From Hypanus sabinus (taxonomy: Eukaryota): a DNA stretch of 64,000 nt. Location: positions 149,420,001 to 149,484,000 of the forward strand of contig NC_082710.1 in assembly GCF_030144855.1 (NCBI RefSeq), written 5' to 3'. The stretch's first letter is position 1, and each line of letters begins with the position of its first letter. Below, in pieces: positions 30,530 through 64,000 of the stretch. The position numbers and the translations under genes were made by a program. The notes beneath the pieces are model-generated. The model was not told where the DNA came from. It did no database searches and saw only the letters and a list, made by a program, of their open reading frames with translations.

Positions 30530-32249
30530 GTGTAATAAACGTACCCAATGTCGCCCTCACCTTGAGAGACCTATTCCTGTGTGGATGCATCATGTTGTGT
30601 GTGGATCGCAAGTTCTTTTAGCCCAAAAATACACTTTATTCAGCAATATTGCAAAATAAAGTTATTTACAAAGACCAAAGATGCTCTGTCTGTTTTGTGA
30701 CCTCCAGTTAGCGCAAAGGGTGTTTTAGAGCGCCTTTTTTTTGGGCTAAATCGTCTGAAAATGAGCTGACGTATTGAAATAAAGCAAAGGATGGTACTAA
30801 CTAATCTGGCAGTGAGCTGTCAGCCATCAGCAGTGCAAGGGTTCCTGGGCCAGTCGATCCCAGCGCTTCTCGGTCTTTTGGCTGAGATCAGGCGTTCTTC
30901 TTAGAGCGCAGCTATAACAAGTGTTCTTATTAGGACAGAGAGAGAGAGAGAGAGAGAGAGCGACGCAGGGCGGCGATGGAAGAAAGGATCGGTGAAGAAG
31001 GCGGAGACAGCAGTGCTTCGACTTGCGGGACAGGAAACCAAAACGCTGTAAGACTAGGTGTCCGAGGTTAGACAAAGTACCTTGGACAACGGTAAATAAA
31101 CTTACTCAATGTGGTCCTCACCCTGAAACACCTCTTCCTTTGTGGTTGCATCAGTTTTGGTGTGAATCGCAGGGTTTTTTTTTAGCCACAAGAGTCGCTT
31201 TATTCAGAAATAATTCAGTATAAAGTTATTTACAAAGACCATTAATTGACTCTGATGCGCTGTCTGTTTGTGTCTTCCAGATAGCGCAAAGGGTGTTTCA
31301 CAGCGGCATCTTTATTTTTGGCCAACTCGCCTTAAAGTGCGCTAATGCATTGAATGAAATCAAAGGATCGTGCAAAATGACCGGGCAGGGAGGTATCAGA
31401 GGTGAAAAGGGCAAAGGTTCCCGGACCATGTGATCTCATCTCTTCCCGGCCGATTGGCTGAGATCAGGCGTTCTTATCAGAGCGCAGCTACACCAAGTGT
31501 TCATTTAGGGGTCAGAACGAAAGCGACGCAGCGTGGCGATGGAAAAGAGGATGGCGGGACAGATCAGCGGAACGGTGAAGAAGGCCGGGGAGTGCAGTGC
31601 ATCGACTTGGGGGACTGGAAACCAAAACGCTCTAAGACTAGGTGTCCGAGGTTAGACAACGTACCTTGGACAACAGGTAATAAAGGTAGCCAATACCGCC
31701 CTCACCCTGAGACACCTCTTCCTTTGTGGATGCATGAGGTTGCGTGTGGATCCCAGGTTCTCTTAGCCCAAAAATACACTTCATTCAGAAATATTGCAAA
31801 GGAAAGTTATTTAGAAAAACCATTTGTTTACTCTGATGTTCTTTCTGTCTGTTACCTCCAGTGAGTGCAAAGTGTGCTGAGTCGCGGCATTTTGTTTGGC
31901 TAAATCGCATTAAAATGCACAAACGTATTGAAAGAAAACAAAGGTTGGTACTATCTAATTTGGCAGCGAGCTGTCAATCATCAGGAGTGCATGGGTTTCT
32001 GGGTCAGTCGATAGCAGCGCTTCTCGGCCTTTTGGCTGACATCAGGCGTTCTTATTAGAGCAGAGCTATGCCAAGTGTTCTTATTAGGACACAGAGAGGA
32101 AGCGAGCCAGAGCGGCGATGCATGAAAGGATCGGTGAAAAAGGCGGGGAGAGCAGTGCTTCGACTTGCGGGACAGGAAACCAAAACGCTGTAAGACTAGG
32201 TGTCCGAGGTTAGACAACGTACCTTGGACAACGGGTAACAAACTTACTC

Positions 32250-35200
32250 AATGTGGCCCTCACCCTGAAACACCTCTTCCTTTGTGGTTCCATCAGTTTT
32301 GGTGTGAATCGCAGGGGGTTTTTTTAGCCACAAGAGTCGCTTTATTCAGAAATAATTCAGTATAAAGTTATTTACAAAGACCATTAGTTGACTCTGATGC
32401 TCTGTCTATTTGTGTCCTCCAGTTAGCGCAAAGGGTGTTTTACAGCGGTATCTTTATTTTTGGCTAACTCGCCTTAAATTGCGCGAATGCACTGAATGAA
32501 ATCAAAGGTTCGTGCAAAATGACCAGGCAGGGAGCAATCAGAGGTGAAGAGGGCAAAGGTTCACGGACCATGTGATCTCAGCTCTTCACAGCCTATTGGC
32601 TGAGATCAGGTGTTCTTATCAGAGCGCAGCTGCACCAAGTCTTCATTTAGGATTGAGAACGAAAGCGACGCAGGGCGGTGATGGAAGACGATGGCGGGAC
32701 AGATCAGCGGATCGGTGATAAAGGCTGAGGAGTGCAGCGCTACGACTTGCGGGGTGGGAATACAGAACGCAGTCGGATTGAGCGTCCGACTTTAGCAGGT
32801 ACTCTGGTCAACGGAGATAATACGTCCCCAATGTCGCCCTCTCCCTGAGAGACGACTTCCTATGTGATTCCATGAGGTTTTGTGTTGACCGCCGAGCTTT
32901 TAGCCCAAAAAAAGTCCTATCTTCAAAAATATTCCAAATTAATGATATTTACAAAAACCATTAGTTGACACTCATGCACAGTCTGGTTGTCTATCACCTC
33001 CACAGCGCAAACAGTGCATGTCAGCGGCATTTTTTTGCTAAATCGCCTTAGAATGCGCTGAGATACAGAATGAAGGCAAGGCGAGTACTTCCGAAGCAGG
33101 CAGGGCATCTAACAGTGGTAAGGAGGGCAAAGGTTCACGGACCAGGCGACCTCAGCTTTTCTCGGCTTTTTGGCTGAGATCAGGCGTTCTTCTTAGAGCG
33201 CAGCTATAACAAGTGTTCTTATTAGGACACAGAAAGAATGCGACGCAGGGCAGCGATGGAAAGAAGGATCGGTGAAGAAGGCGGTGAGAGCAGGGCTTCG
33301 ACTTGCCGGGCTGGAATGCAAAACGCTGTATGATGTTGTCCGAGGTTAGAAAACTTACCCAGGAGAACGTGTAATAAACGTACCCAATGTCGCCCTCACA
33401 TTGAGAAACCTCTTCCAATGTGGCTGTATCATGTGTGTGGATCCCAGGTTCTTTTTGCCCAAAAATATACTTTATTCAGAAATACCTCAAAATAAATTTA
33501 TTTGTAAAACCCATTTGTTTACTCTGATGCTCTGTCTGTTTGTGACCTGCAGTGAGGGCAAAGTGTGCTGTGCAGCGCCATTTTGTTTGGCGAAATCGCA
33601 TTAAAATGCAGGAACGTATTGAAATAAAGCAAAGGTTGGTGCTACCTTATCTGGCAGGGAGCAGTCAATCATCAGGAGTGCATGGGATCCTGGGCCAGTC
33701 GATCTCAGACCTTCTCGGCATTTTGGCTGAGAGCAGGCGTTCTTCTTAGAGCGCAGCTATAACAAGTGTTCTCAATAGGACACAGAAAGAATGCGACGCA
33801 GGGCAGCGATGGAAAGAAGGATCGGTGAAGAAAGCGGTGAGAGCAGTGCTTCGACTTGCCGGGCTGGAATGCAGAACGCTGTATGATGGTGTCCGAGGTT
33901 AGAAAACTTACCCAGGAGAACGTGTAATAAACGTACCCAATGTCGCCCTCACATTGAGAGACCTCGTCTTATGCGGCTGTGTCATGTAGTGTGTGGATCC
34001 CAGGTTGTTTTAGCCCCAAACTACACTTTATTCAGAAATACCTCAAAATAAATTTATTTACAAAAACCATTTGTTTACTCTGATGCTCTGTCTGCTTGGG
34101 ACCTCCTGTGAGCGCAAAGTGTGCTGTGCAGCGCCATTTTGTTTGGCTAAATCGCATTACAATACACTAACGTATTGAAATAAAGCAAAGATTAGTGCAA
34201 ACTAATCTGGCAGGGAGCTGTCAATCATCAGGAGTGCATGGGGTCCTGGGCCAGTCGATCTCAGCGCTTCTCGGCATTTTCGCTGAGATCAGGCGTTCTT
34301 ATTAGAGCAGAGCTATGCCAAGTGTTCATATTAGGACACAGAGAGGAAGCCAGCCAGAGCGGCTATGCATGAAAGGATCGGTGAAAAAGGCGGGGAGAGC
34401 AGTGCTTCGACTTGCGGGACAGGAAACCAAAACGCTGTAAGATTAGGTGTCCGAGGTTAGACAACGTACCTTGGACAACGGGTAATAAACTTACTCAATG
34501 TGGCCCTCACCCTGAAACATCTCTTCCTTTGTGGTTCCATCAGTTTTGGTGTGAATCGCAGGGTTTTTTTTAGCCACAAGAGTCGCTTTATTCAGAAATA
34601 ATTCAGTATAAAGTTATGTACAAAGACCATTAGTTGACTCTGATGCTCTGTCTGTTTGTGTCCTCCAGTTAGCGCAAAGGATGTTTTACAGCGGTATCTT
34701 TATTTTTGGCTAACTCGCCTTAAATTGCGCGAATGCACTGAATGAAATCAAAGGTTCGTGCAAAATGACCAGGCAGGGAGCAATCAGAGGTGAAGAGGGC
34801 AAAGGTTCGCGGACCATGTGATCTCAGCTCTTCACAGCCTATTGGCTGAGATCAGGCGTTCTTATCAGAGCGCAGCTACACCAAGTCTTCATTTAGGGTT
34901 GAGAACGAAAGCGACGCAGGGCGGTGATGGAAGACGATGGCGGGACAGATCAGCGGATCGGTGATGAAGGCTGAGGAGTGCAGCGCTACTACTTGCGGGG
35001 TGGGAATACAGAACGCGGTCGGATTGAGCGTCCGACTTTAGCAGGTACTCTGGTCAACGGAGATAATACGTCCCCAATGTCGCCCTCTCCCTGAGAGACG
35101 ACTTCTTATGTGATTCCATGAGGTTTTGTGTTGACCGCCGAGCTTTTAGCCCAAAAAAGTCCGACCTTCAAAAATATTCCAAATTAATGATATTTACAAA

Positions 35201-38200
35201 AACCATTAGTTGACACTCATGCACTGTCTGGTTGTCTATCACCTCCACAGCGCAAACAGTGCAAGACAGCGGCATTTTTTTTTTGCTAAATCACCTTAAA
35301 ATGCGCTGAAATACATAATGAAGGCAAGGAGAGTACTTCCGAAGCAGGCAGGGCAACTAACAGTGGTAAGGGGAGCAAAGGTTCACGGACCAGGCGACCT
35401 CAGCTTTTCTCGGCCTTTTGGCTGAGATCAGGCGTTCTTCTTAGAGCGCAGCTATAACAAGTGTTCTTATTAGGACACAGAAATGATGCGACGCAGGGCA
35501 GCGATGGAAAGAAGGATCGGTGAAGAAGGCGGTGAGAGCAGGGCTTCGACTTGCCGGGCTGGAATGCAGAACGCTGTATGATGGTGTCCGAGGTTAGAAA
35601 GCTTACCCAGGAGAACGTGTAATAAACGTACCCAATGTCGCCCTCACATTGAGAAACCTCTTCCAATGTGGCTGTATCATGTGTGTGGATCCCAGGTTCT
35701 TTTTGCCCAAAAATATACTTTATTCAGAAATACCTCAAAATAAATTTATTTGTAAAACCCATTTGTTTACTCTGATGCTCTGTCTGTTTGTGACCTGCAG
35801 TGAGGGCAAAGTGTGCTGTGCAGCGGCATTTTGTTTGGCGAAATCGCATTAAAATGCAGGAACGTATTGAAATAAAGCAAAGGTTGGTGCTACCTTATCT
35901 GGCAGGGAGCAGTCAATCATCAGGAGTGCATGGGATCCTGGGCCAGTCGATCTCAGACCTTCTCGGCATTTTGGCTGAGAGCAGGCGTTCTTCTTAGAGC
36001 GCAGCTATAACAAGTGTTCTCAATAGGACACAGAAAGAATGCGACGCAGGGCAGCGATGGAAAGAAGGATCGGTGAAGAAAGCGGTGAGAGCAGTGCTTC
36101 GACTTGCCGGGCTGGAATGCAGAACGCTGTATGATGGTGTCCGAGGTTAGAAAACTTACCCAGGAGAACGTGTAATAAACGTACCCAATGTCGCCCTCAC
36201 ATTGAGAGACCTCGTCTTATGCGGCTGTGTCATGTAGTGTGTGGATCCCAGGTTGTTTTAGCCCCAAACTACACTTTATTCAGAAATACCTCAAAATAAA
36301 TTTATTTACAAAAACCATTTGTTTACTCTGATGCTCTGTCTGCTTGGGACCTCCTGTGAGCGCAAAGTGTGCTGTGCAGCGCCATTTTGTTTGGCTAAAT
36401 CGCATTACAATACACTAACGTATTGAAATAAAGCAAAGATTAGTGCAAACTAATCTGGCAGGGAGCTGTCAATCATCAGGAGTGCATGGGGTCCTGGGCC
36501 AGTCGATCTCAGCGCTTCTCGGCATTTTCGCTGAGATCAGGCGTTCTTATTAGAGCAGAGCTATGCCAAGTGTTCATATTAGGACACAGAGAGGAAGCCA
36601 GCCAGAGCGGCTATGCATGAAAGGATCGGTGAAAAAGGCGGGGAGAGCAGTGCTTCGACTTGCGGGACAGGAAACCAAAACGCTGTAAGATTAGGTGTCC
36701 GAGGTTAGACAACGTACCTTGGACAACGGGTAATAAACTTACTCAATGTGGCCCTCACCCTGAAACATCTCTTCCTTTGTGGTTCCATCAGTTTTGGTGT
36801 GAATCGCAGGGTTTTTTTTAGCCACAAGAGTCGCTTTATTCAGAAATAATTCAGTATAAAGTTATTTACAAAGACCATTAGTTGACTCTGATGCTCTGTC
36901 TGTTTGTGTCCTCCAGTTAGCGCAAAGGATGTTTTACAGCGGTATCTTTATTTTTGGCTAACTCGCCTTAAATTGCGCGAATGCACTGAATGAAATCAAA
37001 GGTTCGTGCAAAATGACCAGGCAGGGAGCAATCAGAGGTGAAGAGGGCAAAGGTTCGCGGACCATGTGATCTCAGCTCTTCAAAGCCTATTGGCTGAGAT
37101 CAGGCGTTCTTATCAGAGCGCAGCTACACCAAGTCTTCATTTAGGGTTGAGAACGAAAGCGACGCAGGGCGGTGATGGAAGACGATGGCGGGACAGATCA
37201 GCGGATCGGTGATGAAGGCTGAGGAGTGCAGTGCTACTACTTGCGGGGTGGGAATACAGAACGCGGTCGGATTGAGCGTCCGACTTTAGCAGGTACTCTG
37301 GTCAACGGAGATAATACGTCCCCAATGTCGCCCTCTCCCTGAGAGACGACTTCTTATGTGATTCCATGAGGTTTTGTGTTGACCGCCGAGCTTTTAGCCC
37401 AAAAAAGTCCGACCTTCAAAAATATTCCAAATTAATGATATTTACAAAAACCATTAGTTGACACTCATGCACTGTCTGGTTGTCTATCACCTCCACAGCG
37501 CAAACAGTGCAAGACAGCGGCATTTTTTTTTTGCTAAATCACCTTAAAATGCGCTGGAATACATAATGAAGGCAAGGAGAGTACTTCCGAAGCAGGCAGG
37601 GCAACTAACAGTGGTAAGGGGAGCAAAGGTTCACGGACCAGGCGACCTCAGCTTTTCTTGGCCTTTTGGCTGAGATCAGGCGTTCTTCTTAGAGCGCAGC
37701 TATAACAAGTGTTCTTATTAGGACACAGAAATGATGCGACGCAGGGCAGCGATGGAAAGAAGGATCGGTGAAGAAGGCGGTGAGAGCAGGGCTTCGACTT
37801 GCCGGGCTGGAATGCAGAACGCTGTATGATGGTGTCCGAGGTTAGAAAGCTTACCCAGGAGAACGTGTAATAAACGTACCCAATGTCGCCCTCACATTGA
37901 GAAACCTCTTCCAATGTGGCTGTATCATGTGTGTGGATCCCAGGTTCTTTTTGCCCAAAAATATACTTTATTCAGAAATACCTCAAAATAAATTTATTTG
38001 TAAAACCCATTTGTTTCCTCTGATGCTCTGTCTGTTTGTGACCTGCAGTGAGCGCAAAGTGTGCTGTGCAGCGGCATTTTGTTTGGCTAAATCGCATTAA
38101 AATGCACTAACGTATTGAAATAAAGCAAAGGTTGGTGCTACCTTATCTGGCAGGGAGCAGTCAATCATCAGGAGTGCATGGGATCCTGGGCCAGTCGATC

Positions 38201-39571
38201 TCAGACCTTCTCGGCATTTTGGCTGAGAGCAGGCGTTCTTCTTAGAGCGCAGCTATAACAAGTGTTCTCAATAGGACACAGAAAGAATGCGACGCAGGGC
38301 AGCGATGGAAAGAAGGATCGGTGAAGAAAGCGGTGAGAGCAGTGCTTCGACTTGCCGGGCTGGAATGCAGAACGCTGTATGATGGTGTCCGAGGTTAGAA
38401 AACTTACCCAGGAGAACGTGTAATAAACGTACCCAATGTCGCCCTCACATTGAGAGACCTCGTCTTATGCGGCTGTGTCATGTAGTGTGTGGATCCCAGG
38501 TTGTTTTAGCCCCAAACTACACTTTATTCAGAAATACCTCAAAATAAATTTATTTACAAAAACCATTTGTTTACTCTGATGCTCTGTCTGCTTGGGACCT
38601 CCTGTGAGCGCAAAGTGTGCTGTGCAGCGCCATTTTGTTTGGCTAAATCGCATTACAATACACTAACGTATTGAAATAAAGCAAAGATTAGTGCAAACTA
38701 ATCTGGCAGGGAGCTGTCAATCATCAGGAGTGCATGGGGTCCTGGGCCAGTCGATCTCAGCGCTTCTCGGCATTTTCGCTGAGATCAGGCGTTCTTATTA
38801 GAGCAGAGCTATGCCAAGTGTTCATATTAGGACACAGAGAGGAAGCCAGCCAGAGCGGCTATGCATGAAAGGATCGGTGAAAAAGGCGGGGAGAGCAGTG
38901 CTTCGACTTGCGGGACAGGAAACCAAAACGCTGTAAGATTAGGTGTCCGAGGTTAGACAACGTACCTTGGACAACGGGTAATAAACTTACTCAATGTGGC
39001 CCTCACCCTGAAACATCTCTTCCTTTGTGGTTCCATCAGTTTTGGTGTGAATCGCAGGGTTTTTTTTAGCCACAAGAGTCGCTTTATTCAGAAATAATTC
39101 AGTATAAAGTTATTTACAAAGACCATTAGTTGACTCTGATGCTCTGTCTGTTTGTGTCCTCCAGTTAGCGCAAAGGATGTTTTACAGCGGTATCTTTATT
39201 TTTGGCTAACTCGCCTTAAATTGCACGAATGCACTGAATGAAATCAAAGGTTCGTGCAAAATGACCAGGCAGGGAGCAATCAGAGGTGAAGAGGGCAAAG
39301 GTTCGCGGACCATGTGATCTCAGCTCTTCACAGCCTATTGGCTGAGATCAGGCGTTCTTATCAGAGCGCAGCTACACCAAGTCTTCATTTAGGGTTGAGA
39401 ACGAAAGCGACGCAGGGCGGTGATGGAAGACGATGGCGGGACAGATCAGCGGATCGGTGATGAAGGCTGAGGAGTGCAGCGCTACGACTTGCGGGGTGGG
39501 AATACAGAACGCGGTCGGATTGAGCGTCCGACTTTAGCAGGTACTCTGGTCAACGGAGATAATACGTCCCC
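32250..39571 (+). repeat. 4-mer higher-order repeat, 2248 bp (579+558+553+558), about 3.3 copies
   Basis: Anchors 33386/35634/37882 and 35076/37324/39572 are exactly 2248 apart. ORF-track duplicates at 33152, 35400, 37648 and 39896 agree. Confidence 0.95.
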
Positions 39572-42500
39572 AATGTCGCCCTCTCCCTGAGAGACGACTT
39601 CTTATGTGATTCCATGAGGTTTTGTGTTGACCGCCGAGCTTTTAGCCCAAAAAAGTCCGACCTTCAAAAATATTCCAAATTAATGATATTTACAAAAACC
39701 ATTAGTTGACACTCATGCACTGTCTGGTTGTCTATCACCTCCACAGCGCAAACAGTGCAAGACAGCGGCATTTTTTTTTTGCTAAATCACCTTAAAATGC
39801 GCTGGAATACATAATGAAGGCAAGGAGAGTACTTCCGAAGCAGGCAGGGCAACTAACAGTGGTAAGGGGAGCAAAGGTTCACGGACCAGGCGACCTCAGC
39901 TTTTCTTGGCCTTTTGGCTGAGATCAGGCGTTCTTCTTAGAGCGCAGCTATAACAGGTGTTCTTATTAGGACACAGAGAGAAAGCGAGCCAGAGCGGCGA
40001 TGGAAAGAAGGATCGGTGAAGAAGGCGGGGAGAGCAGTGCTTCGATTTGAGGGACTGGAAACCAAAACGCTGTAAGGGTAGGTGTCCTAGATTACAAAAC
40101 ATTTCTTTGCTAAATCACCTGAAAATGCGCTAAAATACAGAATGAAGGCAAGGAGAGTACTTCCGAAGCAGGCAGGGCGCTATCAGTGGTCAGGAGGGCA
40201 AAGGTTACCGGACCAGGCGACCTCAGCTTTTCTCGGCTTTTTCGCTGAAGTCAGGCGTTCTTCTTAGAGCGCAGCTATAACAAGTGTTCTTATTAGGACA
40301 CAGAAAGAATGCGACGCAGGGCGACGATGGAAAGAAGGCGGTGAGAGCAGTGCTTCGACTTGCCGGGCTGGAATGCAGAACGCTGTATGATGGTGTCCGA
40401 GGTTAGAAAGCTTACCCAGGAGAACGTGTAATAAACGTACCCAATGTCGCCCTCACATTGAGAGACCTCGTCCTATGCGGCTGTATCATGCAGTGTGTGG
40501 ATCCCAGGTTGTTTTAGCCCAAAACTACACTTTATTCAGAAATACATCAAAATAAATTTATTTACAAAAACCATTTGTTTACTCTGAAGCTCTGTCTGTT
40601 TGTGACATCCATTGAGCGCAAAGTGTGCTGTGCAGCGGCATTTTGTTTGGCTAAATCGCATTGCAATACACTAACGTATTGAAATAAAGCAAAGATTGGT
40701 GCAAACTAATCTGGCAGGGAGCTGTCAATCATCAGGAGTGCATGGGGTCCTGGGCCAGTCGATCTCAGCGCTTCTCGGCATTTTCGCTGAGATCAGGCGT
40801 TCTTATTAGAGCAGAGCTATGCCAAGTGTTCATATTAGGACACAGAGAGGAAGCGAGCCAGAGCGGCGATGCATGAAAGGATCGATGAAAAAGGCGGGGA
40901 GAGCAGTGCTTCGACTTGCGGGACAGGAAACCAAAACGCTGTAAGATTAGGTGTCCGAGGTGAGACAACGTACCTTGGACAACGGGTAATAAACTTACTC
41001 AATGTGGCCCTCACCCTGAAACATCTCTTCCTTTGTGGTTCCATCAGTTTTGGTGTGAATCGCAGGTTTTCTTTTTTAGCCACAAGAGTCGCTTTATTCA
41101 GAAATAATTCAGTATAAAGTTATTTACAAAGACCATTAGTTGACTCTGATGCTCTGTCTGTTTGTGTCCTCCAGTTAGCGCAAAGGATGTTTTACAGCGG
41201 TATCTTTATTTTTGGCTAACTCGCCTTAAATTGCGCGAATGCACTGAAAGGTTCGTGCGAAATGACAGGGCAGGGAGCAATCAGAGGTGAAGAGGGCAAA
41301 GGTTCACGGACCATGTGATCTCAGCTCTTCACAGCCTATTGGCTGAGATCAGGCGTTCTTATCAGAGCGCAGCTACACCAAGTCTTCACTTAGGATTGAG
41401 AACGAAGGCGACGCAGGGCGGTGATGGAAGACGATGGCGGGACAGATCAGCGGATCGGTGATAAAAGCTGAGGAGTGCAGCGCTACGACTTGCGGGCTGG
41501 GAATACAGAACGCGGTCGGATTGAGCGTCCGACTTTAGCAGGTACGCTGGTCAACGGAGATGATACATCCCCAATGTCGCCCTCTCCCTGAGAGACGACT
41601 TCCTATGTGATTCCATGAGGTTTTGTGTTGACCGCCGAGTTTTTAGCCCAAAAAAAGTCCTATCTTCAAAAATATTCCAAATTAATGATATTTACAAAAA
41701 CCATTAGTTGACACTCATGCACAGTCTGGTTGTCTATCACCTCCACAGCGCAAACAGTGCATGACAGCGGCATTTTTTTTTGCTAAATCGCCTTAGAATG
41801 CGCTGAGATACAGAATGAAGGCAAGGTTAGTACTTCCTAATCAGGCAGGGCAACTAACAGTGGTAAGGAGGGCAAAGGTTCACGGACCAGGCGACCTCAG
41901 CTTTTCTTGGACTTTTGGCTGAGATCAGGCGTTCTTCTTACAGCGCAGCTATAACAAGTGTTCTTATTAGGACACAGAAATGATGCGACGCAGGGCAGCG
42001 ATGGAAAGAAGGATCGGTGAAGAAGGCGGTGAGAGCAGGGCTTCGACTTGCCGGGCTGGAATGCAGAACGCTGTATGATGTTGTCCGAGGTTAGAAAACT
42101 TACCCAGGAGAACGTTTAATAAACGTACCCAATGTCGGCCTCGCATTGAGAGACCTCTTCCAATGTGGCTGCATCATGTTGTGTGTGTATCCCAGGTTCT
42201 TTTCGCCACAAAATACACTTTATTCAGAAATACCTCAAAATAAATTTATTTACAAAAACCATTTGTTTACTCTGATGCTCTGTCTGCTTGGGACCTCCTG
42301 TGAGCGCAAAGTGTGCTGTGCAGCGCCATTTCGTTTGGCTAAATCGCATTAAAATGCAGGAACGTATTGAAATAAAGCAAGGGATGGTTCTAACTAATCT
42401 GGCAGGGAGCTGCCGATCATCAGGAGTGCAAGGGTTTCTGGGCCAGTCGATCTCAGACCTTCTCGGCAATTTGCCTGAGATCAGGCGTTCTTATTAGAGC

Positions 42501-54000: not shown

Positions 54001-57000
54001 ATTAGTAGACCCTGATGCTCTGTCTGGTTGTGTCCTCCAGTTAGCGCAAAGGGTGTTTTACAGCGGCGTTTTTTTTTAGCTAAATCGCTTTAAAATGCGC
54101 TAATGTATTGAATGAAATCAAAGGTTCTTGCAAAATGACCGGGCAGGGAGCAATCAGAGGTGAAGAGGGCAAAGGTTCGCGGACCATGTGATCTCAGCTC
54201 TTCACAGCCTATTGGCTGAGATCAGGCGTTCTTATCAGAGCGCAGCTACACCAAGTCTTCATTATAATTGAGAACGAAAGCGACGCAGGGCGGTGATGGA
54301 AGACGATGGCGGGACAGATCAGCGGATCGGTGATAAAAGCTGAGGAGTGCAGCGCTACGACTTGCGGGGTGGGAATACAGAACGCAGTCGGATTGAGCGT
54401 CCGACTTAAGCAGGTACTCTGGTCAACGGAGATAATACGTCCCCAATGTCGCCCTCTCTCTGAGAGACGACTTCCTATGTGATTCCATGAGGTATTGTGT
54501 TGACCGCAGAGCTTTTAGCCCAAAAAAGTCCTAGCTTCAAAAATATTCCAAATTAATGTTATTTACAAAAACCATTAGTTGACACTCATGCACTGTCCGG
54601 TTGTCTGTCACCTCCACTGAGCGCAAACAGTGCATGACAGCGGCATTTCTTTGCTAAATCACCTGAAAATGCGCTGAAATACAGAATGAAGGCAAGGCGA
54701 ACACTTCCGAAGCAGGCAGGGCAACTAACAGTGGTAAGGAGGGCAAAGGTTCACGGACCAGGCGACCTCAGCTTTTCTCGGCTTTTTCGCTGAAGTCAGG
54801 CGTTCTTCTTAGAGCGCAGCTATAACAAGTGTTCTTATTAGGACACAGAAAGAATGCGTCGCAGGGCGACGATGGAAAGAAGGCGGTGAGAGCAGGGCTT
54901 CGACTTGCCGGGCTGGAATGCAGAACGCTGTATGATGGTGTCCGAGGTTAGAAAGCTTACCCAGGAGAACGTGTAATAAACGTACCCAATGTCGCCCTCA
55001 CATTGAGGAACCTCTTCCTACGTGGCTGTATCATGTTGTGTGTGGATTCCAGGTTCGTTTTCCCGAAAATACACTTTATTCAGAAATACCTCAAAATAAA
55101 TTTATTTGCAAAACCCATTTGTTTCCTCTGATGCTCTGTCTGTTTGTGACCTGCAGTGAGGGCAAAGTGTGCTGTGCAGCGCCATTTTGTTTGGCTAAAT
55201 CGCATTAAAATGCAGGAACGTATTGAAATAAAGCAAGGGTTGGTTCTAACTAATCTGACCGGGAGCTGCCAATCATCAGGAGTGCATGGGTTTCTGGGCC
55301 AGTCGATCGCAGACCTCGGCAATTTGGCTGAGATCAGGCGTTCTTATTAGAGCAGAGCTATGCCAAGTGTTCTTATTAGGACACAGAGAGGAAGCGACGC
55401 AGAGCGCCGATGGAAAAAAGGATCGGTGAAAGAGGCGGGGAGAGCAGTGCTTCGATTTGAGGGACTGGAAACCAAAACGCTGTAAGGGTAGGTGTCCTAG
55501 ATTACAAAACGTTCCTTGGACAACGGGTAATTAACGTACCCAGTGTCGCCCTCACATTGAGAAACCTCTTCCCACGTGGCTGTATCATGTGTGTGGATCC
55601 CAGGTTCTTTTAGCTCAAAAATACACTTTATTCAGAAATACCTCAAAATAAATTTATTTACAAAAACCATTTGTTTACCCTGATGCTCTGTCTGCTTGTG
55701 ACATCTAATGAGCGCAAAGTGTGCTGTGCAGCGGCATTTTGTTTGGCTAAATCGCATTTAAGTACACTAACATAGTGAAATAAAGCAAAGATTGTTGCAA
55801 ACTAATCTGGCAGGGAGCTGTCAATCATCAGGAGTGCATGGGGTCCTGGGCCAGTCGATCTTAGCACTTCTCGGCATTTTGGCTGATATCAGGCGTTGTT
55901 ATTAGAGCAGAGCTATAACAGGTGTTCTTATTAGGACACAGAGAGGAAGCGACGCAGAGCGGCGATGGAAGAAAGGATCGGTGAAAGAGGCGGGGAGAGC
56001 AGTGCTTCGACTTGAGGGACTGGAAAACACAGCGCTGTAAGGGTAGGTGTCCTAGATTAGAAAACGTTCCTTGGAGAACGGGTAATTAACGGGTAACCCA
56101 ATGTAGACCTCACCTTGAGAGACCTCTTCCTTTGCGGATGCATCAGTTTTGGTGTGAATCGCAGGTTTTTCTAGCCACAAAATACACTTTATGCAGAAAT
56201 ATTTCAAAATAAAGTTAATTACAAAGACCATTAGTAGACCCTGATGCTCTGTCTGGTTGTGTCCTCCAGTTAGCGCAAAGGGTGTTTTACAGCGGCGTTT
56301 TTTTTTGCTAAATTGCCTTAAAATGCGCTAATGTATTGAATGAAATCAAAGGTTCTTGCAAAATGACCGGGCAGGGAGCAATCAGAGGTGAAGAGGGCAA
56401 AGGTTGGCGGACCATGTGATCTCAGCTCTTCACAGCCTATTGGCTGAGATCAGGCGTTCTTATCAGAGCGCAGCTACACCAAGTCTTCATTATAATTGAG
56501 AACGAAAGCGACGCAGGGCGGTGATGGAAGACGATGGCAGGACAGATCAGCGGATCGGTGATAAAAGCTGAGGAGTGCAGCGCTACGACTTGCGGGGTGG
56601 GAATACAGAACGCAGTCGGATTGAGCGTCCGACTTAAGCAGGTACTCTGGTCAACGGAGATAATACGTCCCCAATGTCGCCCTCTCTCTGAGAGACGACT
56701 TCCTATGTGATTCCATGAGGTATTGTGTTGACCGCACAGCTTTTAGCCCAAAAAAGTCCTAGCTTCAAAAATATTCCAAATTAATGTTATTTACAAAAAC
56801 CATTAATTGACACTCATGCACTGTCTGGTTGTCTATCACCTCCACAGCGCAAACAGTGCATGACAGCGGCATTTTTTTGCTAAATCACTTTAAAATGCGC
56901 TGAAATACAGAATGAAGGCAAGGCGAACACTTCCGAAGCAGGCAGGGCATCTAACAGTGGTAAGGAGGGCAAAGGTTCACGGACCAGGCGACCTCAGCTT

Positions 57001-58903
57001 TTCTCGGCCATTTGGCTGAGATCAGGCGTTCTTCTTAGAGCGCAGCTATAACAAGTGTTCTTATTAGGACACAGTACGAATGCGACGCAGGGCGGCGATG
57101 GAAAGAAGGATCGGTGAAGAAAGCGGTGAGAGCAGGGCTTCGACTTGCCGGGCTGGAATGCAGAACGCTGTATGATGGTGTCCGAGGTTAGAAAACGTAC
57201 CCAGGAGAAAGTGTAATACACGTACCCAATGTCACCCTCACATTGAGAGACCTCTTCCAATGTGGCTGCATAATGTTGTATGTGTATCCCAGGTTCTTTT
57301 CGCCCAAAACGACACTTTATTCAGAAATACCTCAAAATAAATTTATTTACAAAAACCATTTGTTTACTCTGATGCTCTGTCTGCTTGTGACATCTAATGA
57401 CCGCAAAGTGTGCTGTGCAGCGGCATTTTGTTTGGCTAAATCGCATTTAAGTACACTAACGTAGTGAAATAAAGCAAAGGTTGGTGCAAACTAATCTGGC
57501 AGGGAGCTGTCAATCATCAGGAGTGCATGGGGTCCTGGGCCAGTCGATCTTAGCCCTTCTCGACATTTTGGCTGATATCAGGCGTTCTTATTAGAGCGCA
57601 GCTATAACAGGTGTTCTTATTAGGACACAGAGAGGAAGCGACGCAGAGCGGCGATGGAAGAAAGGATCGGTGAAAGAGGCGGGGAGAGCAGTGCTTCGAC
57701 TTGAGGGACTGGAAAACACAGCGCTGTAAGGGTAGGTGTCCGAGATTAGAAAACGTTCCTTGGAGAACGGGTAATTAAGGTACCCAATGTCGCCCTCACA
57801 CTGGGAGACCACTTCCTTTGCGGATGCATCAGTTTTGGTGTGAATCGCAGGTTTTTCTAGCCACAAAATACACTTTATGCAGAAATATTTCAAAATAAAG
57901 TTAATTACAAAGACCATTAGTAGACCCTGATGCTCTGTCTGGTTGTGTCCTCCAGTTAGCGCAAAGGGTGTTTTACAGCGGCGTTTTTTTTTTTGCTAAA
58001 TCGCCTTAAAATGCGCTAATGTATTGAATGAAATCAAAGGTTCGTGCGAAATGACCGGGCAGGGAGCAATCAGAGGTGAAGAGGGCAAAGGTTCGCGGAC
58101 CATGTGATCTCAGCTCTTCACAGCCTATTGGCTGAGATCAGGCGTTCTTATCAGAGCGCAGCTACACCAAGTCTTCATTTAGGATTGAGAACGAAAGCGA
58201 CGCAGGGCGGTGATGGAAGACGATGGCGGGACAGATCAGCGGATCGGTGATAAAGGCTGAGGAGTGCAGCGCTACGACTTGCGGGGTGGGAATACAGAAC
58301 GCAGTCGGATTGAGCGTCCGACTTAAGCAGGTACTCTGGTCAACGGAGAGAATACGTCCCCAATGTCGCCCTCTCCCTGAGCGACGACTTCTTATGTGAT
58401 TCCATGAGGTTTTGTGTTGACCGCCGAGCTTTTAGACCAAAAAAGTCCGACCTTCAAAAATATTCCAAATTAATGTTATTTACAAAAACCATTAGTTGAC
58501 ACTCATGCACTGTCTGGTTGTCTGTCACCTCCACTGAGCGCAAACAGTGCATGACAGCGGCATTTCTTTGCTAAATCACCTGAAAATGCGCTAAAATACA
58601 GAATGAAGGCAAGGATAGTACTTCCGAAGCAGGCAGGGCATCTAACAGTGGTAAGGGGGGCAAAGGTTCACGGACCAGCGACCTCAGCTTTTCTCGGCTT
58701 TTTCGCTGAAGTCAGGCGTTCTTCTTAGAGCGCAGCTATAACAAGTGTTCTTATTAGGACACAGAATGAATGCGACGCAGGGCGACGATGGAAAGAAGGC
58801 GGTGAGAGCAGTGCTTCGACTTGCCGGGCCGGAATGCAGAACGCTGTATGATGGTGTCCGAGGTTAGAAAGCTTACCCAGGAGAACGTGTAATAAACGTA
58901 CCC
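51081..58903 (+). repeat. 7-mer higher-order repeat, about 3.9 kb, 2 copies
   Basis: Same subtype order twice. Offsets are 3903-3917 bp (51081/54988/58904, 51638/55542, 52196/56100, 53871/57786). Confidence 0.8.
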
Positions 58904-61900
58904 AGTGTCGCCCTCACATTGAGGAACCTCTTCCTACGTGGCTGTATCATGTTGTGTGTGGATTCCAGGTTCTTTTTCCCAAAAATACACTTTATTCAGA
59001 AGTACCTCAAAATAAATTTATTTGCAAAACCCATTTGTTTCCTCTGATGCTCTGTCTGTTTGTGACCTGCAGTGAGGGCAAAGTGTGCTGTGCAGCGCCA
59101 TTTTGTTTGGCTAAATCGCATTAAAATGCAGGAACGTATTGAAATAAAGCAAGGGTTGGTTCTAACTAATCTGGCCGGGAGCTGCCAATCATCAGGAGTG
59201 CATGGGTTTCTGGGCCAGTCGATCGCAGACCTTCTCGGCAATTTGGCTGAGATCAGGCGTTCTTATTAGAGCAGAGCTATGCCAAGTGTTCTTATTAGGA
59301 CACAGAGAGGAAGCGAGCCAGAGCGGCGATGGAAGAAAGGATCGTTGAAAGAGGCGGGGAGTGCAGTGCTTCGACTTGTGGGACTGGAAACCAAAGCGCT
59401 GTAAGGGTAGGTGTCCTAGATTAGAAAACGCTCCTTGGGGAACGGGTAATTAAGGTTCCCAATGTCGCCCTCACACTGGGAGACCACTTCCTTTGCGGAT
59501 GCATCAGTTTTGGTGTGAATCGCAGGTTTTGCTAGCCACAAAATACACTTTATGCAGAAATATTTCAAAATAAAGTTAATTACAAAGACCATTAGTAGAC
59601 CCTGATGCTCTGTCTGGTTGTGTCCTCCAGTTAGCGCAAAGGGTGTTTTACAGCGGCGTTTTCTTTTTTAGCTAAATCGCCTTAAAATGCGCTAATGTAT
59701 TGAATGAAATCAAAGGTTCTTGCAAAATGACCGGGCAGGGAGCAATCAGATGTGAAGTGGGCAAAGTTTCGCGGACCATGTGATCTCAGCTCTTCACAGC
59801 CTATTGGCTGAGATCAGGTGTTCTTATCGGAGCGCAGCTACACCAAGTCTTCATTTAGGATTGAGAACGAAAGCGACGCAGGGCGGTGATGGAAGACGAT
59901 GGCGGGACAGATCAGCAGATCGGTGATAAAAGCTGAGGAGTGCAGCGCTACGACTTGCGGGGTGGGAATACAGAACGCAGTCGGATTGAGCGTCCGACTT
60001 AAGCAGGTGGGAGAACGGAGATAATACGTCTCCAATGTCGCCCTCTCTCTGAGAGACGACTTCCTATGTGATTCCATGAGGTATTGTGTTGACCGCAGAG
60101 CTTTTAGCCCAAAAAAGTCCTATCTTCAAAAATATTCCAAATTAATGTTATTTACAAAAACCATTAGTTGACACTCATGCACTGTCCGGTTGTCTGTCAC
60201 CTCCACTGAGCGCAAACAGTGCATGACAGCGGCATTTTTTTGCTAAATCACCTGAAAATGCGCTAAAATACAGAATGAAGGCAAGGATAGTACTTCCGAA
60301 GCAGGCAGGGCATCTAACAGTGGTAAGGAGGGCAAAGGTTCACGGACCAGGCGACCTCAGCTTTTCTCGGCTTTTTCGCTGAAGCCAGGCGTTCTTCTTA
60401 GAGCGCAGCAATAACAAGTGTTCTTATTAGGACACAGTACGAATGCGACGCAGGGCGGCGATGGAAAGAAGGATCGGTGAAGAAGGCGGTGAGAGCAGGG
60501 CTTCGACTTGCCGGGCTGGAATGCAAAACGCTGTATGATGTTGTCCGAGGTTAGAAAACGTACCCGGGAGAACGTGTAATAAACGTACCCAATGTCGCCC
60601 TCGCATTGAGAGACCTCTTCCTACGTGGCTGTATCATGTTGTGTGTGGATTCCAGGTTCTTTTTCCCAAAAATACACTTTATTCAGAAATACCTCAAAAT
60701 AAATTTATTTGCAAAACCCATTTGTTTCCTCTGATGCTCTGTCTGTTTGTGACCTGCAGTGAGGGCAAAGTGTGCTGTGCAGCGCCATTTTGTTTGGCTA
60801 AATCGCATTAGAATGCAGGAACGTATTGAAATAAAGCAAGGGTTGGTTCTAACTAATCTGGCCGGGAGCTGCCAATCATCAGGAGTAAATGGGTTTCTGG
60901 GCCAGTCGATCGCAGACCTTCTCGGCAATTTGGCTGAGATCAGGCGTTCTTATTAGAGCAGAGCTATGCCAAGTGTTCTTATTAGGACACAGAGAGGAAG
61001 CGAGCCAGAGCGGCGATGGAAGAAAGGATCGGTGAAAGAGGCGGGGAGAGCAGTTCTTCGATTTGAGGGACTGGAAACCAAAACGCTGTAAGGGTAGGTG
61101 TCCTAGATTAGAAAACGTTCCTTGGGGAACGGGTAATTAAGGTACCCAATGTCGCCCTCACACTGGGAGACCACTTCCTTTGCAGATGCATCAGTTTTGG
61201 TGTGAATCGCAGGTTTTTCTAGCCACAAAATACACTTTATGCAGAAATATTTCAAAATAAAGTTAATTACAAAGACCATTAGTAGACCCTGATGCTCTGT
61301 CTGGTTGTTTCCTCCAGTTAGCGCAAAGGGTGTTTTACAGCGGCGTTTTTTTTTTTAGCTAAATCGCCTTAAAATGCGCTAATGTATTGAATGAAATCAA
61401 AGGTTCTTGCAAAATGACCGGGCAGGGAGCAATCAGAGGTGAAGAGGGCAAAGTTTCGCGGACCATGTGATCTCAGCTCTTCACAGCCTATTGGCTGAGA
61501 TCAGGTGTTCTTATCGGAGCGCAGCTACACCAAGTCTTCATTTAGGATTGAGAACGAAAGCGATGCAGGGCGGTGATGGAAGACGATGGCGGGACAGATC
61601 AGCGGATCGGTGATAAAAGCTGAGGAGTGCAGCGCTACGACTTGCGGGGTGGGAATACAGAACGCAGTCGGATTGAGCGTCCGACTTAAGCAGGTACTCT
61701 GGTCAACGGAGATAATACGTCTCCAATGTCGCCCTCTCTCTGAGAGACGACTTCCTATGTGATTCCATGAGGTATTGTGTTGACCGCAGAGCTTTTAGCC
61801 CAAAAAAGTCCTATCTTCAAAAATATTCCAAATTAATGTTATTTACAAAAACCATTAGTTGACACTCATGCACTGTCTGGTTGTCTGTCACCTCCACTGA

Positions 61901-64000
61901 GCGCAAACAGTGCATGACAGCGGCATTGTTTTGCCAAATCACCTGAAAATGCACTAAAATACAGAATGAAGGCAAGGAGAGTACTTCCGAAGCAGGCAGG
62001 GCATCTAACAGTGGTAAGGAGGGCAAAGGTTCACGGACCAGGCGACCTCAGCTTTTCTCGGCTTTTTCGCTGAAGTCAGGCGTTCTTCTTAGAGCGCAGC
62101 TATAACAAGTGTTCTTATTAGGACACAGAAAGAATGCGACGCAGGGCGACGATGGAAAGAAGGCGGTGAGAGCAGTGCTTCGACTTGCCGGGCTGGAATG
62201 CAGAACGCTGTATGATGGTGTCCGAGGTTAGAAAGCTTACCCGGGTGAACGTGTAATAAACGTACCCAATGTCGCCCTCGCATTGAGAGACCTCTTCCTA
62301 CGTGGCTGTATCATGTTGTGTGTGGATTCCAGGTTCTTTTTCCCAAAAATACACTTTATTCAGAAGTACCTCAAAATAAATTTATTTGCAAAACCCATTT
62401 GTTTCCTCTGATGCTCTGTCTGTTTGTGACCTGCAGTGAGGGCAAAGTGTGCTGTGCAGCGCCATTTTGTTTGGCTAAATCGCATTAAAATGCAGGAACG
62501 TATTGAAATAAAGCAAGGGTTGGTTCTAACTAATCTGGCCGGGAGCTGCCAATCATCAGGAGTGCATGGGTTTCTGGGCCAGTCGATCGCAGACCTTCTC
62601 GGCAATTTGGCTGAGATCAGGCGTTCTTATTAGAGCAGAGCTATGCCAAGTGTTCTTATTAGGACACAGAGAGGAAGCGAGCCAGAGCGGCGATGGAAGA
62701 AAGGATCGTTGAAAGAGGCGGGGAGTGCAGTGCTTCGACTTGTGGGACTGGAAACCAAAGCGCTGTAAGGGTAGGTGTCCTAGATTAGAAAACGTTCCTT
62801 GGGGAACGGGTAATTAAGGTTCCCAATGTCGCCCTCACACTGGGAGACCACTTCCTTTGCGGATGCATCAGTTTTGGTGTGAATCGCAGGTTTTGCTAGC
62901 CACAAAATACACTTTATGCAGAAATATTTCAAAATAAAGTTAATTACAAAGACCATTAGTAGACCCTGATGCTCTGTCTGGTTGTGTCCTCCAGTTAGCG
63001 CAAAGGGTGTTTTACAGCGGCGTTTTCTTTTTTAGCTAAATCGCCTTAAAATGCGCTAATGTATTGAATGAAATCAAAGGTTCTTGCAAAATGACCGGGC
63101 AGGGAGCAATCAGATGTGAAGTGGGCAAAGTTTCGCGGACCATGTGATCTCAGCTCTTCACAGCCTATTGGCTGAGATCAGGTGTTCTTATCGGAGCGCA
63201 GCTACACCAAGTCTTCATTTAGGATTGAGAACGAAAGCGACGCAGGGCGGTGATGGAAGACGATGGCGGGACAGATCAGCAGATCGGTGATAAAAGCTGA
63301 GGAGTGCAGCGCTACGACTTGCGGGGTGGGAATACAGAACGCAGTCGGATTGAGCGTCCGACTTAAGCAGGTGGGAGAACGGAGATAATACGTCTCCAAT
63401 GTCGCCCTCTCTCTGAGAGACGACTTCCTATGTGATTCCATGAGGTATTGTGTTGACCGCAGAGCTTTTAGCCCAAAAAAGTCCTATCTTCAAAAATATT
63501 CCAAATTAATGTTATTTACAAAAACCATTAGTTGACACTCATGCACTGTCCGGTTGTCTGTCACCTCCACTGAGCGCAAACAGTGCATGACAGCGGCATT
63601 TTTTTGCTAAATCACCTGAAAATGCGCTAAAATACAGAATGAAGGCAAGGATAGTACTTCCGAAGCAGGCAGGGCATCTAACAGTGGTAAGGGGGGCAAA
63701 GGTTCACGGACCAGGCGACCTCAGCTTTTCTCGGCTTTTTCGCTGAAGCCAGGCGTTCTTCTTAGAGCGCAGCAATAACAAGTGTTCTTATTAGGACACA
63801 GTACGAATGCGACGCAGGGCGGCGATGGAAAGAAGGATCGGTGAAGAAGGCGGTGAGAGCAGGGCTTCGACTTGCCGGGCTGGAATGCAAAACGCTGTAT
63901 GATGTTGTCCGAGGTTAGAAAACGTACCCGGGAGAACGTGTAATAAACGTACCCAATGTCGCCCTCGCATTGAGAGACCTCTTCCTACGTGGCTGTATCA
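58904..64000 (+). repeat. 6-mer higher-order repeat, 3364 bp
   Basis: Anchors 58904/62268, 59461/62825, 60034/63398 and 60591/63955 are all exactly 3364 apart. Confidence 0.92.

What the first reader, a model, noticed from the sequence alone, without database searches (positions are those of the whole stretch)
30530..64000. Satellite monomer preserves a Tx1-in-Tx1 junction: sense ORF2 fused to an antisense Tx1 3' tail
Seen: monomer bases 30547-30612 align ungapped to Tx1 ORF2 at 29529-29594 with 54/66 identity, and similarity extends about 30 bp upstream (cctggacaacggg). Immediately after ...ggatcccagg the monomer switches to a short T-rich stretch and ccaaaaatatactttattcagaa. That 23-mer at 33459-33481 is identical to the antisense Tx1 3' terminus at 19746-19768. 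Inference: one Tx1 retrotransposed antisense into another Tx1 ORF2, and a piece of about 560 bp spanning that junction was amplified into more than 33 kb of satellite. TE-derived satellites are known, but one whose monomer records a nested retrotransposition junction, with both parent sequences in the same window, is unusual and may be undescribed.
Basis: partly seen in the sequence, partly recalled or inferred. Interest (0 to 1): 0.85.

Follow-up and report, generated by a model that had tools for sequence, protein, structure and literature searches.

The report
Stingray satellite built from jumping-gene scraps
A 33-kb-plus tandem repeat in a stingray genome has a 558-bp unit pieced together from two fragments of a Tx1-like jumping gene (one landed backwards inside the other), a scrap of U2 spliceosomal RNA and about 220 bp of unknown origin; this is a clear but ordinary example of satellite DNA recycled from transposon debris.

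Summary
The array runs from 30530 to 64000: 57 full monomers of 542-584 bp, three types about 73% alike, in CAB/CABB higher-order units 98.5-99.6% alike. Every type carries a roughly 98-bp sense piece of Tx1-like ORF2. It breaks at the same base (29594-equivalent), then comes a short T run, then the canonical 3' end of a Tx1-like LINE in antisense (66 nt firm, about 100 nt weakly). That layout fits one LINE inserting backwards into ORF2-derived DNA.

- LINE sequence explains about 175-200 of 558 bp. ORF2 does not continue on either side.
- The monomer also holds a U2 snRNA 5' piece starting at nt 1, perhaps a U1 piece, and about 220 bp unassigned.
- The "sense Tx1" at 28915-30529 is a later 5'-truncated insertion into the edge monomer, not a parent. 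The same scan noted this separately (s1-146639).

Contigs under eight coded organism labels hold the satellite, several with the junction. Composite satellites from nested transposon remnants are already described in reviews. Verdict: new member of a known kind, modest interest. Another note (s1-195636) records the same satellite continuing into the next window.

The parts
30530..64000 (+). Satellite array. It runs off the window end. 57 full monomers of 542-584 bp: types A (16), B (23), C (18). Higher-order units are CABB (2248 bp, about 32218-40968), then mixed CAB/CABB. One 313-bp partial monomer lies at 40103-40415.
   Evidence: between-type identity 0.73-0.74, within-type 0.90-0.95, successive higher-order units 98.5-99.6% identical
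28416..28914 (+). Degenerate left-edge monomer material. It covers the U1-like/U2 region, part g and a short start of the ORF2 piece, then a second partial copy ending ...GGTTAGAAAACGTACCCTGGAC. No satellite homology lies further left.
28915..30529 (+). 5'-truncated, frameshifted Tx1-like LINE copy inserted into the edge monomer: ORF2 3' part with zf-RVT, 3' UTR and an AATAAAAAAA tail. The flanks are contiguous in the monomer and about 2-4 nt of target were lost. It serves as a family reference, not as a parent.
   Evidence: PF13966, E=1.2e-8; homology to the antisense copy starts at 28912; in-silico excision restores a B-type monomer; blastx 28943-30316 across four frame changes
33354..33448 (+). 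Example monomer (type B): sense piece of LINE ORF2, equivalent to 29497-29594, i.e. aa about 34-66 of the 294-aa ORF at 29397-30281, upstream of zf-RVT.
   Evidence: blastx of the B consensus gives 61% over 36 aa to P0087, E=7e-9, with hits also to shark, ray and skate proteins
33449..33457 (+). T-rich run TTCTTTTTG, which is the A-rich tail of the antisense LINE. The in-window reference has TTCTATTTTT in the same place (19736-19745).
33458..33523 (-). Canonical 3' terminus of a Tx1-like LINE in antisense (66 nt firm). It includes the exact 23-mer shared with 19746-19768.
   Evidence: Contigs of dispersed copies in several runs match only this stretch and diverge at 33452 and about 33496-33527
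33524..33551 (-). Weaker possible continuation of the antisense LINE 3' UTR.
   Evidence: alignment to the second tail module at 19894-19977 reaches consensus position 201, z=6.2
33552..33643 (.). Unassigned part d (about 92 bp), with a short imperfect inverted repeat around a T run.
   Evidence: no LINE protein, Rfam or in-window match
33644..33698 (+). Possible U1 snRNA 5' piece (ACCTTATCTGGCAGGG...). Weak evidence.
   Evidence: No U1 hit from Infernal at E<=10. Alignment to a U1 sequence recalled from memory gives z=3.5 for type B only: 3 of 500 shuffles reach it, and A and C are not significant
33707..33782 (+). U2 snRNA 5' piece: model position 1 to about 33, then GTTCTTAT(C/T)AG, with about 9 nt missing between them, plus a partial duplicate (CAAGTGTTCTTATTAG).
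   Evidence: U2 (RF00004) is the top Rfam hit, + strand, from model position 1, in all four monomer slices tested: 16-20 bits, E 0.026-0.31, below the 46-bit gathering score. z=11 for the B consensus. The motif occurs 52 times against 1.7 expected
33783..33906 (.). Unassigned part g (about 125 bp). It directly precedes the ORF2 piece of the next monomer.
   Evidence: Not ORF2 sequence upstream of 29497. No protein hit. Not the U2 3' half (z<=0.5)
19746..21832 (-). Antisense Tx1-like 3' fragments used as reference. A short 3' end (19746-about 19884) sits on the A-rich tail of a longer copy, whose 3' end is about 19903 and whose coding similarity reaches 21832. About 76% identical to the sense copy.

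Best explanation
This is an old, homogenised, higher-order-repeat satellite whose roughly 558-bp monomer is a composite of retroelement debris.

Inferred history:
1. A 5'-truncated Tx1-like LINE copy (A) lay just downstream of a stretch carrying a 3'-truncated U2 snRNA retro-piece. That stretch possibly also carried a U1 piece, followed by about 125 bp of unknown sequence.
2. A second Tx1-like LINE (B) inserted by target-primed reverse transcription in the opposite orientation into A's ORF2, at the base equivalent to 29594. This left its canonical 3' terminus and short A-rich tail against the ORF2 sequence.
3. A segment of about 560 bp was duplicated in tandem and expanded by unequal exchange. 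It ran from about 50 bp upstream of the snRNA pieces to about 70-100 nt inside B.
4. The monomers diverged into three types about 73% alike.
5. Three- and four-monomer units were then amplified recently (98.5-99.6% identity).
6. Later, another 5'-truncated Tx1-like copy (28915-30529) inserted into the ORF2-derived part of the edge monomer.

Shown: the array and its higher-order structure; the two LINE-derived segments, their orientation and the shared breakpoint; the LINE-to-satellite direction; the U2 piece; the secondary nature of the sense copy.

Inferred: the order of events, the extent of B, and the amplification mechanism.

No cellular function is indicated. No RNA run was listed, so transcription is untested.
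For: - Array and types. Identity of higher-order units.
- ORF2 piece: nhmmer E=4e-9; 72-76% to the sense copy; breakpoint after ...CCCAGG identical in types A, B and C, while both LINE copies read on as TATGTGGGCACC / TAAGTGGGCATC.
- Only this piece hits LINE proteins, in the sense frame.
- Tail: z=12 and z=5.9 against the two in-window 3' ends. Similarity stops at the canonical terminus next to a T run, as at 19736-19745.
- Dispersed copies in public contigs match only the tail and diverge at 33452.
- U2 piece.
- Excising 28915-30529 in silico restores a continuous B-type monomer.
- Contigs bridging the junction occur under several organism labels at 80-99% identity (records 5 and 22; records 14, 15 and 23).
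- LINE family context: relatives carry APE + RVT_1 + zf-RVT, and the closest protein (89%) is from Hypanus sabinus.
- Another Tx1 3' end in the window sits on the tail of a second copy, showing that LINE-next-to-LINE insertion happens in this genome.
Against: - The target ORF2 does not resume after the inserted tail and no target-site duplication is visible, so the far side of the nested insertion is missing from the monomer.
- About 220 bp (parts d and g) has no assigned source.
- The extent of element B beyond about 66 nt rests on weak alignments.
- The U2 match is below Rfam's gathering score.
- The four monomer slices are homologous copies, not independent tests.
- Tx1-clade assignment rests on automatic names and domain content only.
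- No seed (non-tandem) locus was found or could be searched for.
Confidence: 0.7

Rival explanations
1. One reading: the monomer is just a 560-bp slice across one Tx1-in-Tx1 insertion, so all of it is Tx1 sequence.
For: The junction itself is real and shared by all monomer types.
Against: ORF2 homology starts abruptly at 29497-equivalent and is preceded by non-ORF2 sequence, part g. Nothing else in the monomer hits LINE proteins on either strand. The monomer contains a U2 snRNA piece. Parts d and g could still be unseen 5' UTR or variable 3' UTR of a family not represented in the window.
Confidence: 0.12
2. The sense half of the monomer ([U1?][U2 1-52][g][ORF2 piece]) is a single chimeric retrocopy. 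It would have formed when the LINE reverse transcriptase switched templates from LINE RNA to another RNA, then to U2 (and U1) snRNA, as proposed for SINEU and Tx1-Mar heads. The antisense LINE would have inserted into it afterwards.
For: The U2 piece starts at nt 1 and is 3'-truncated. It lies upstream of the ORF2 piece and in the same orientation. Recurrent addition of U1/U2 5' pieces to Tx1-mobilised elements is described in PMC4494074. Another first-reader note reports a U2-headed Tx1 in this genome (s1-146508, untested).
Against: The U1 piece is not confirmed. Part g is unidentified. No sense-orientation tail or poly(A) of the putative retrocopy remains, and no target-site duplications are visible. 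This model adds to the best explanation rather than replacing it.
Confidence: 0.3
3. The reverse direction: Tx1 families captured satellite sequence, or the matches are chance similarity in AT-rich DNA.
For: The tail is AT-rich and short.
Against: The ORF2 piece lies in frame in an ORF conserved in horn shark, whale shark, skate and stingray proteins. The tail is the 3' terminus of dispersed copies with unrelated flanks. The 23-mer has no other near-match in the window, and shuffles give z=12.
Confidence: 0.02
4. One LINE insertion with a twin-priming inversion produced both pieces.
For: It would need only one element.
Against: Twin priming places the inverted 5' segment upstream of the direct 3' segment, and the poly(A) abuts the target. 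Here the A-rich tail abuts the ORF2 piece itself, which is the arrangement expected when the ORF2 DNA is the target. This argument rests on established knowledge of twin priming.
Confidence: 0.03

Closest known systems
Composite satellite DNA from nested or degraded transposon remnants ('TE graveyard' model, PMC12628747) and TE double insertions as satellite seeds (McGurk and Barbash 2018, PMC5932611)
   Same: The monomer shows successive short stretches similar to different repeat sources. One stretch boundary is a TE-in-TE insertion junction. A long homogenised array with higher-order units has formed.
   Different: The junction is preserved to the base and the two LINE pieces can be oriented. 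A spliceosomal snRNA fragment is also part of the unit. The host is a stingray, and the searched library holds no description of this satellite.
snRNA-headed retroposons: SINEU and Tx1-Mar LINEs of crocodilians (Kojima 2015, PMC4494074)
   Same: A 5'-complete, 3'-truncated U2 piece (and possibly a U1 piece) is associated with Tx1-like LINE sequence. SINEU-3 also keeps the first 32 bp of U2.
   Different: Here the pieces sit inside a tandem-repeat monomer, not at the 5' end of a dispersed element. The only LINE tail in the unit is in the opposite orientation, so the unit is not built like a SINE. That paper found SINEU only in crocodilians.
Keno, the U2-gene-targeting Tx1-clade LINE (Kojima and Fujiwara 2004, as cited in PMC4494074 and PMC4640811)
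   Same: Tx1-type LINE sequence and U2 sequence lie in one locus.
   Different: Keno is followed by U2 from nt 39 (PMC4640811). Here U2 nt about 1-33 and 43-52 are both present on one side, with no LINE between them and no U2 3' part after a LINE tail.

Membership tests
TE-derived (composite) satellite DNA | Long head-to-tail tandem array with homogenised monomers | tested here: met
   57 full monomers over 33.5 kb; higher-order units 98.5-99.6% alike
TE-derived (composite) satellite DNA | Monomer segments homologous to transposable elements, with direction TE to satellite | tested here: met
   The ORF2 piece is conserved coding sequence. The tail is the terminus of dispersed copies
Nested LINE-in-LINE insertion junction (target-primed reverse transcription) | Inserted element ends at its canonical 3' terminus with an A-rich tail against the target | tested here: met
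   Similarity stops at the same terminus as at 19746 and in dispersed contigs (33452), next to TTCTTTTTG
Nested LINE-in-LINE insertion junction (target-primed reverse transcription) | Target is LINE ORF2 interrupted mid-ORF | tested here: met
   All types break after the 29594-equivalent base, where both LINE copies continue
Nested LINE-in-LINE insertion junction (target-primed reverse transcription) | Target sequence resumes, with or without duplication, beyond the 5' end of the inserted element | tested here: not met
   No ORF2 sequence from 29595 onward anywhere in the monomer. The repeat unit may simply end before it
Tx1 clade of non-LTR retrotransposons | APE endonuclease + RT + C-terminal zinc-binding region, grouping with Tx1 in an RT phylogeny | tested here: inconclusive
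   The window copies keep only the region after RT, with zf-RVT. Relatives have Exo_endo_phos + RVT_1 + zf-RVT, and one is named 'transposon TX1' by NCBI. No RT tree was made
U2 snRNA gene | Full-length, about 190 nt, reaching Rfam RF00004 gathering score (46 bits) | tested here: not met
   Only model positions 1 to about 33 plus a short later stretch; 16-20 bits
SINEU / snRNA-headed Tx1-type retroposon | snRNA-derived 5' head starting at or near snRNA nt 1 | tested here: met
   U2 alignment begins at model position 1 in four monomers
SINEU / snRNA-headed Tx1-type retroposon | Same-orientation 3' tail with poly(A), and dispersed copies | tested here: not met
   The only LINE tail is antisense to the head. 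Dispersed contigs share the tail only
Keno | LINE 3' end followed by U2 from nt 39 | tested here: not met
   No U2 sequence follows any LINE tail here. Insertion site taken from PMC4640811

The most novel reading that the evidence does not exclude
The sense half of the monomer is the fossil of a U1/U2-headed, Tx1-mobilised retroposon of the SINEU / Tx1-Mar kind, a class so far reported only from crocodilians. That would place the class in cartilaginous fish. In addition, Tx1-like LINEs of this genome may preferentially re-insert into the Tx1-derived segment of the satellite, since the later copy at 28915-30529 landed 16 bp inside it. The array would then act as a self-derived landing site.
Probability: 0.15. 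Interest if true: 0.6.

Novelty: new member of a known kind. Interest (0 to 1): 0.35.

Why it matters
Origins of satellite DNA are rarely traceable. Here one boundary inside the monomer can be read as a specific retrotransposition event, and it predates the split into three monomer types. That gives a worked example for the 'composite satellite from transposon debris' model in a little-studied vertebrate group. The U2 snRNA piece next to Tx1-like sequence hints that the snRNA-capturing habit of Tx1-type reverse transcriptases is older and wider than the crocodilian cases. Practically, repeat annotators should mask this unit as a satellite and not call it as Tx1 or U2 fragments.

Tried and rejected
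- TRF found nothing in the array because its period limit is 500. Monomers were segmented with nhmmer and blastn instead.
- An Rfam gathering-threshold scan of the whole window found nothing.
- U1 gave no Infernal hit at E<=10. It is only weakly similar to a U1 sequence recalled from memory.
- The idea that part g is the 3' half of U2 was rejected (z<=0.5; not extended by Infernal).
- blastx of the non-LINE parts against 252 LINE proteins gave nothing.
- I tried to fetch full-length relatives with 5' heads and 3' UTRs. P0003 and P0102 returned no DNA because the files were too large, and P0062 was not on record. I could therefore not test whether parts d and g are LINE UTRs.
- No RNA run was listed for the satellite, so transcription is untested.
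- The Pfam scan of long ORFs in the antisense copy showed no RT domain. blastx later showed decayed RT-proximal coding up to 21832.
- Twin priming and chance similarity were considered and rejected (see rival explanations).
- No satellite homology lies left of about 28416.
Full report
**Observation**

Ungapped, 30547-30612 against 29529-29594 gives 54/66 identities. The 23-mer at 33459-33481 equals 19746-19768. With up to four mismatches that 23-mer occurs only at 19746 and in the satellite: 35 hits on the + strand, none on the - strand.

A single monomer used as an nhmmer query finds ORF2 at 29500-29599 with E=4.4e-9. One higher-order unit finds 19736-19814 by blastn at 74.7% over 79 bp, E=1.3e-8.

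The bases after the 23-mer do continue to resemble LINE 3' UTRs:
- B-type consensus positions 99-173 against 19735-19814: z=12 over shuffles.
- The same positions against the reverse complement of 30291-30545: z=5.9.
- Against a second tail module at 19894-19977 the alignment reaches position 201: z=6.2.

**The array**

From 30530 to the window end there are 57 full monomers of 542-584 bp and a few partial ones. They fall into three types: A (16), B (23) and C (18). Types are 73-74% identical to each other and 90-95% identical within a type.

The types are arranged as CABB units of 2248 bp (about 32218-40968), then mixed CAB/CABB units. Successive CABB units are 98.5-99.6% identical. This is a classical higher-order-repeat satellite: old monomer divergence followed by recent amplification of multi-monomer units. 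TRF missed it only because its period limit is 500.

**Anatomy of the monomer**

Coordinates are for the type B example at 33354-33906.

| Part | Coordinates | Evidence |
|---|---|---|
| Sense ORF2 piece | 33354-33448 | Equivalent to 29497-29594, i.e. aa about 34-66 of the ORF at 29397-30281, upstream of its zf-RVT domain (PF13966) |
| T-rich run TTCTTTTTG | 33449-33457 | The reference copy has TTCTATTTTT at 19736-19745 |
| Antisense LINE 3' terminus | 33458-33523 firm; to 33551 weakly | |
| Part d, unassigned | about 92 bp | No match |
| Possible U1 5' piece | 33644-33698 | Weak |
| U2 snRNA 5' piece with partial internal duplicate | 33707-33782 | |
| Part g, unassigned | about 125 bp | No match |

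In a joint alignment the ORF2 piece is 72-76% identical to the sense LINE copy and 69-77% identical between types. All three types break after ...CCCAGG, whereas both LINE copies read on as TATGTGGGCACC and TAAGTGGGCATC. The junction therefore predates the type divergence.

blastx shows that only this piece hits LINE proteins, in the sense frame. The B consensus gives 61% over 36 aa, E=7e-9, with hits to proteins from Heterodontus, Rhinoraja and Rhincodon. The remaining roughly 430 bp hits none of 252 LINE proteins on either strand.

**Direction and nature of the junction**

The ORF2 piece is conserved coding sequence, and the tail is the very end of dispersed elements. In Logan contigs of eight runs, some contigs match only about 33452 to 33500-33527, with unrelated sequence on both sides. 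That is what independent LINE 3' ends would look like.

So LINE sequence went into the satellite, not the reverse. The LINE similarity stops at the canonical terminus, next to an A-rich run (read in the element's orientation), and directly abuts ORF2-derived DNA. This is the signature of a target-primed insertion of one LINE, in antisense, into ORF2-derived DNA.

Twin priming does not fit. It would place the poly(A) against non-LINE target DNA, not against the inverted piece (established knowledge of twin priming).

**What the nested model does not explain**

ORF2 similarity starts abruptly at 29497-equivalent and is preceded by part g, which is not the upstream ORF2 sequence. ORF2 from 29595 onward is nowhere in the monomer. 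LINE sequence thus accounts for about 175-200 of 558 bp.

**The U2 piece**

The U2 piece was seen independently. U2 (RF00004) is the top Rfam hit, on the + strand and starting at model position 1, in all four monomer slices tested (16-20 bits, E 0.026-0.31). This is well under the 46-bit gathering score, because only about 33 nt plus GTTCTTAT(C/T)AG remain.

The motif CTTTTGGCTRAGATCA, allowing up to three mismatches, occurs 52 times against 1.7 expected. Against a U2 sequence recalled from memory the B consensus scores z=11.

A 5'-complete, 3'-truncated snRNA piece is what retro-derived snRNA copies look like. Kojima 2015 (PMC4494074) describes U1/U2-derived 5' heads on crocodilian Tx1-Mar LINEs and SINEU elements, attributed to template switching.

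**The U1 piece and Keno**

The U1 piece, suggested by another first-reader note (s1-195636), is not confirmed. Infernal gives no hit at E<=10. A recalled U1 aligns at z=3.5 for type B only.

Keno-type targeting of U2 is not the explanation. Keno and Utopia leave U2 from nt 39 downstream of the element (PMC4640811). Here both sides of that site lie together, with about 9 nt missing, and no LINE sits between them.

**The 'parents'**

The sense copy at 28915-30529 is a 5'-truncated, frameshifted LINE fragment.
- Its left flank (28416-28914) is degenerate satellite ending ...GGTTAGAAAACGTACCCTGGAC.
- Its right flank continues the monomer at GTGTAATAAACG.
- Joining the flanks in silico gives a continuous B-type monomer with two to four bases missing.

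It is therefore a later insertion into the edge monomer, 16 bp inside the ORF2-derived piece, and not a progenitor. The scan's note s1-146639 says the same.

The antisense reference is also only a 3' fragment, and is in fact two. A short end (19746-about 19884) sits on the tail of a longer copy, whose 3' end is about 19903 and whose decayed coding similarity reaches 21832. The two window copies are about 76% identical over 732 bp.

The closest database protein (89%) is from Hypanus sabinus. Longer relatives carry Exo_endo_phos + RVT_1 + zf-RVT, and one is named 'transposon TX1'. 'Tx1-like' is reasonable but was not tested by phylogeny.

**Left edge and distribution**

No satellite homology exists left of about 28416. 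That point lies roughly 35-50 bp upstream of the U1-like piece, inside part d, and may mark one end of the originally duplicated segment.

Contigs from runs under eight coded organism labels (seven studies) carry the satellite at 80-99% identity. Several bridge the junction (records 5 and 22; records 14, 15 and 23), and depth is very high in one run. The family is evidently shared by related species, but the labels are coded and cannot be named. No RNA run was listed.

**Comparison and verdict**

The 2025 review PMC12628747 explicitly proposes composite satellite monomers arising from nested, degraded TE insertions. McGurk and Barbash 2018 (PMC5932611) show that TE double insertions seed tandem arrays. 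This satellite is a clear new member of that kind. Searches of the held library found no description of it.

The junction is real, but the monomer is a mosaic that also contains snRNA-derived and unassigned DNA, and the in-window sense copy is secondary. Interest is modest. The main added value is the possible link to snRNA-headed Tx1-type retroposons outside crocodilians, which needs genome-wide data to test.

Noticed in passing
window 19746-19903: Two Tx1-like 3' ends lie head to tail on the minus strand. A roughly 140-bp 5'-truncated copy (19746-about 19884) sits directly on the T run / A-rich tail of the longer copy, whose 3' end is at about 19903. The two tail modules align over about 150 nt.
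   Followed up: partly
window 28915-30529: The later LINE insertion landed about 16 bp inside the ORF2-derived segment of the satellite monomer, with almost no target loss. One case cannot distinguish chance (about 1 in 17 for lying that close to the boundary) from a preference for self-derived sequence.
   Followed up: partly
window 25734-26037: Assembly gap of 304 N between the antisense LINE region and the sequence leading to the satellite edge. Left as is.
   Followed up: no
window 8551-9148 and 7148-7403: A G+C-rich minisatellite with nested periods of 26/52/70/96/140 bp, and a C/A-rich 56-bp tandem repeat. Both are unrelated to the satellite.
   Followed up: no
window 40103-40415: One partial monomer (313 bp, monomer positions about 240-589) interrupts the CABB series. 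It is a deletion within the array, not an insertion.
   Followed up: partly
window 30938-30960: The first monomer carries a (GA)n run where other monomers have ACACAGAGAGG, a local microsatellite expansion.
   Followed up: no
window 159-595 and 27418-27830: Inverted pair of a dispersed repeat, 71% identical over 443 bp. Not identified.
   Followed up: no
window 22386-24988: Internal inverted and direct repeat pairs (22404-22549 / 24841-24988; 22753-22975 / 24475-24695; 22386-22481 / 26192-26288) upstream of the antisense LINE fragment. This looks like another rearranged repeat. Not identified.
   Followed up: no
monomer boundary, e.g. window 34440-34480: An 8-bp imperfect hairpin (GTCCGAGG ... 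CCTTGGAC, 12-nt loop) spans the part g / ORF2-piece boundary. It may be chance.
   Followed up: no
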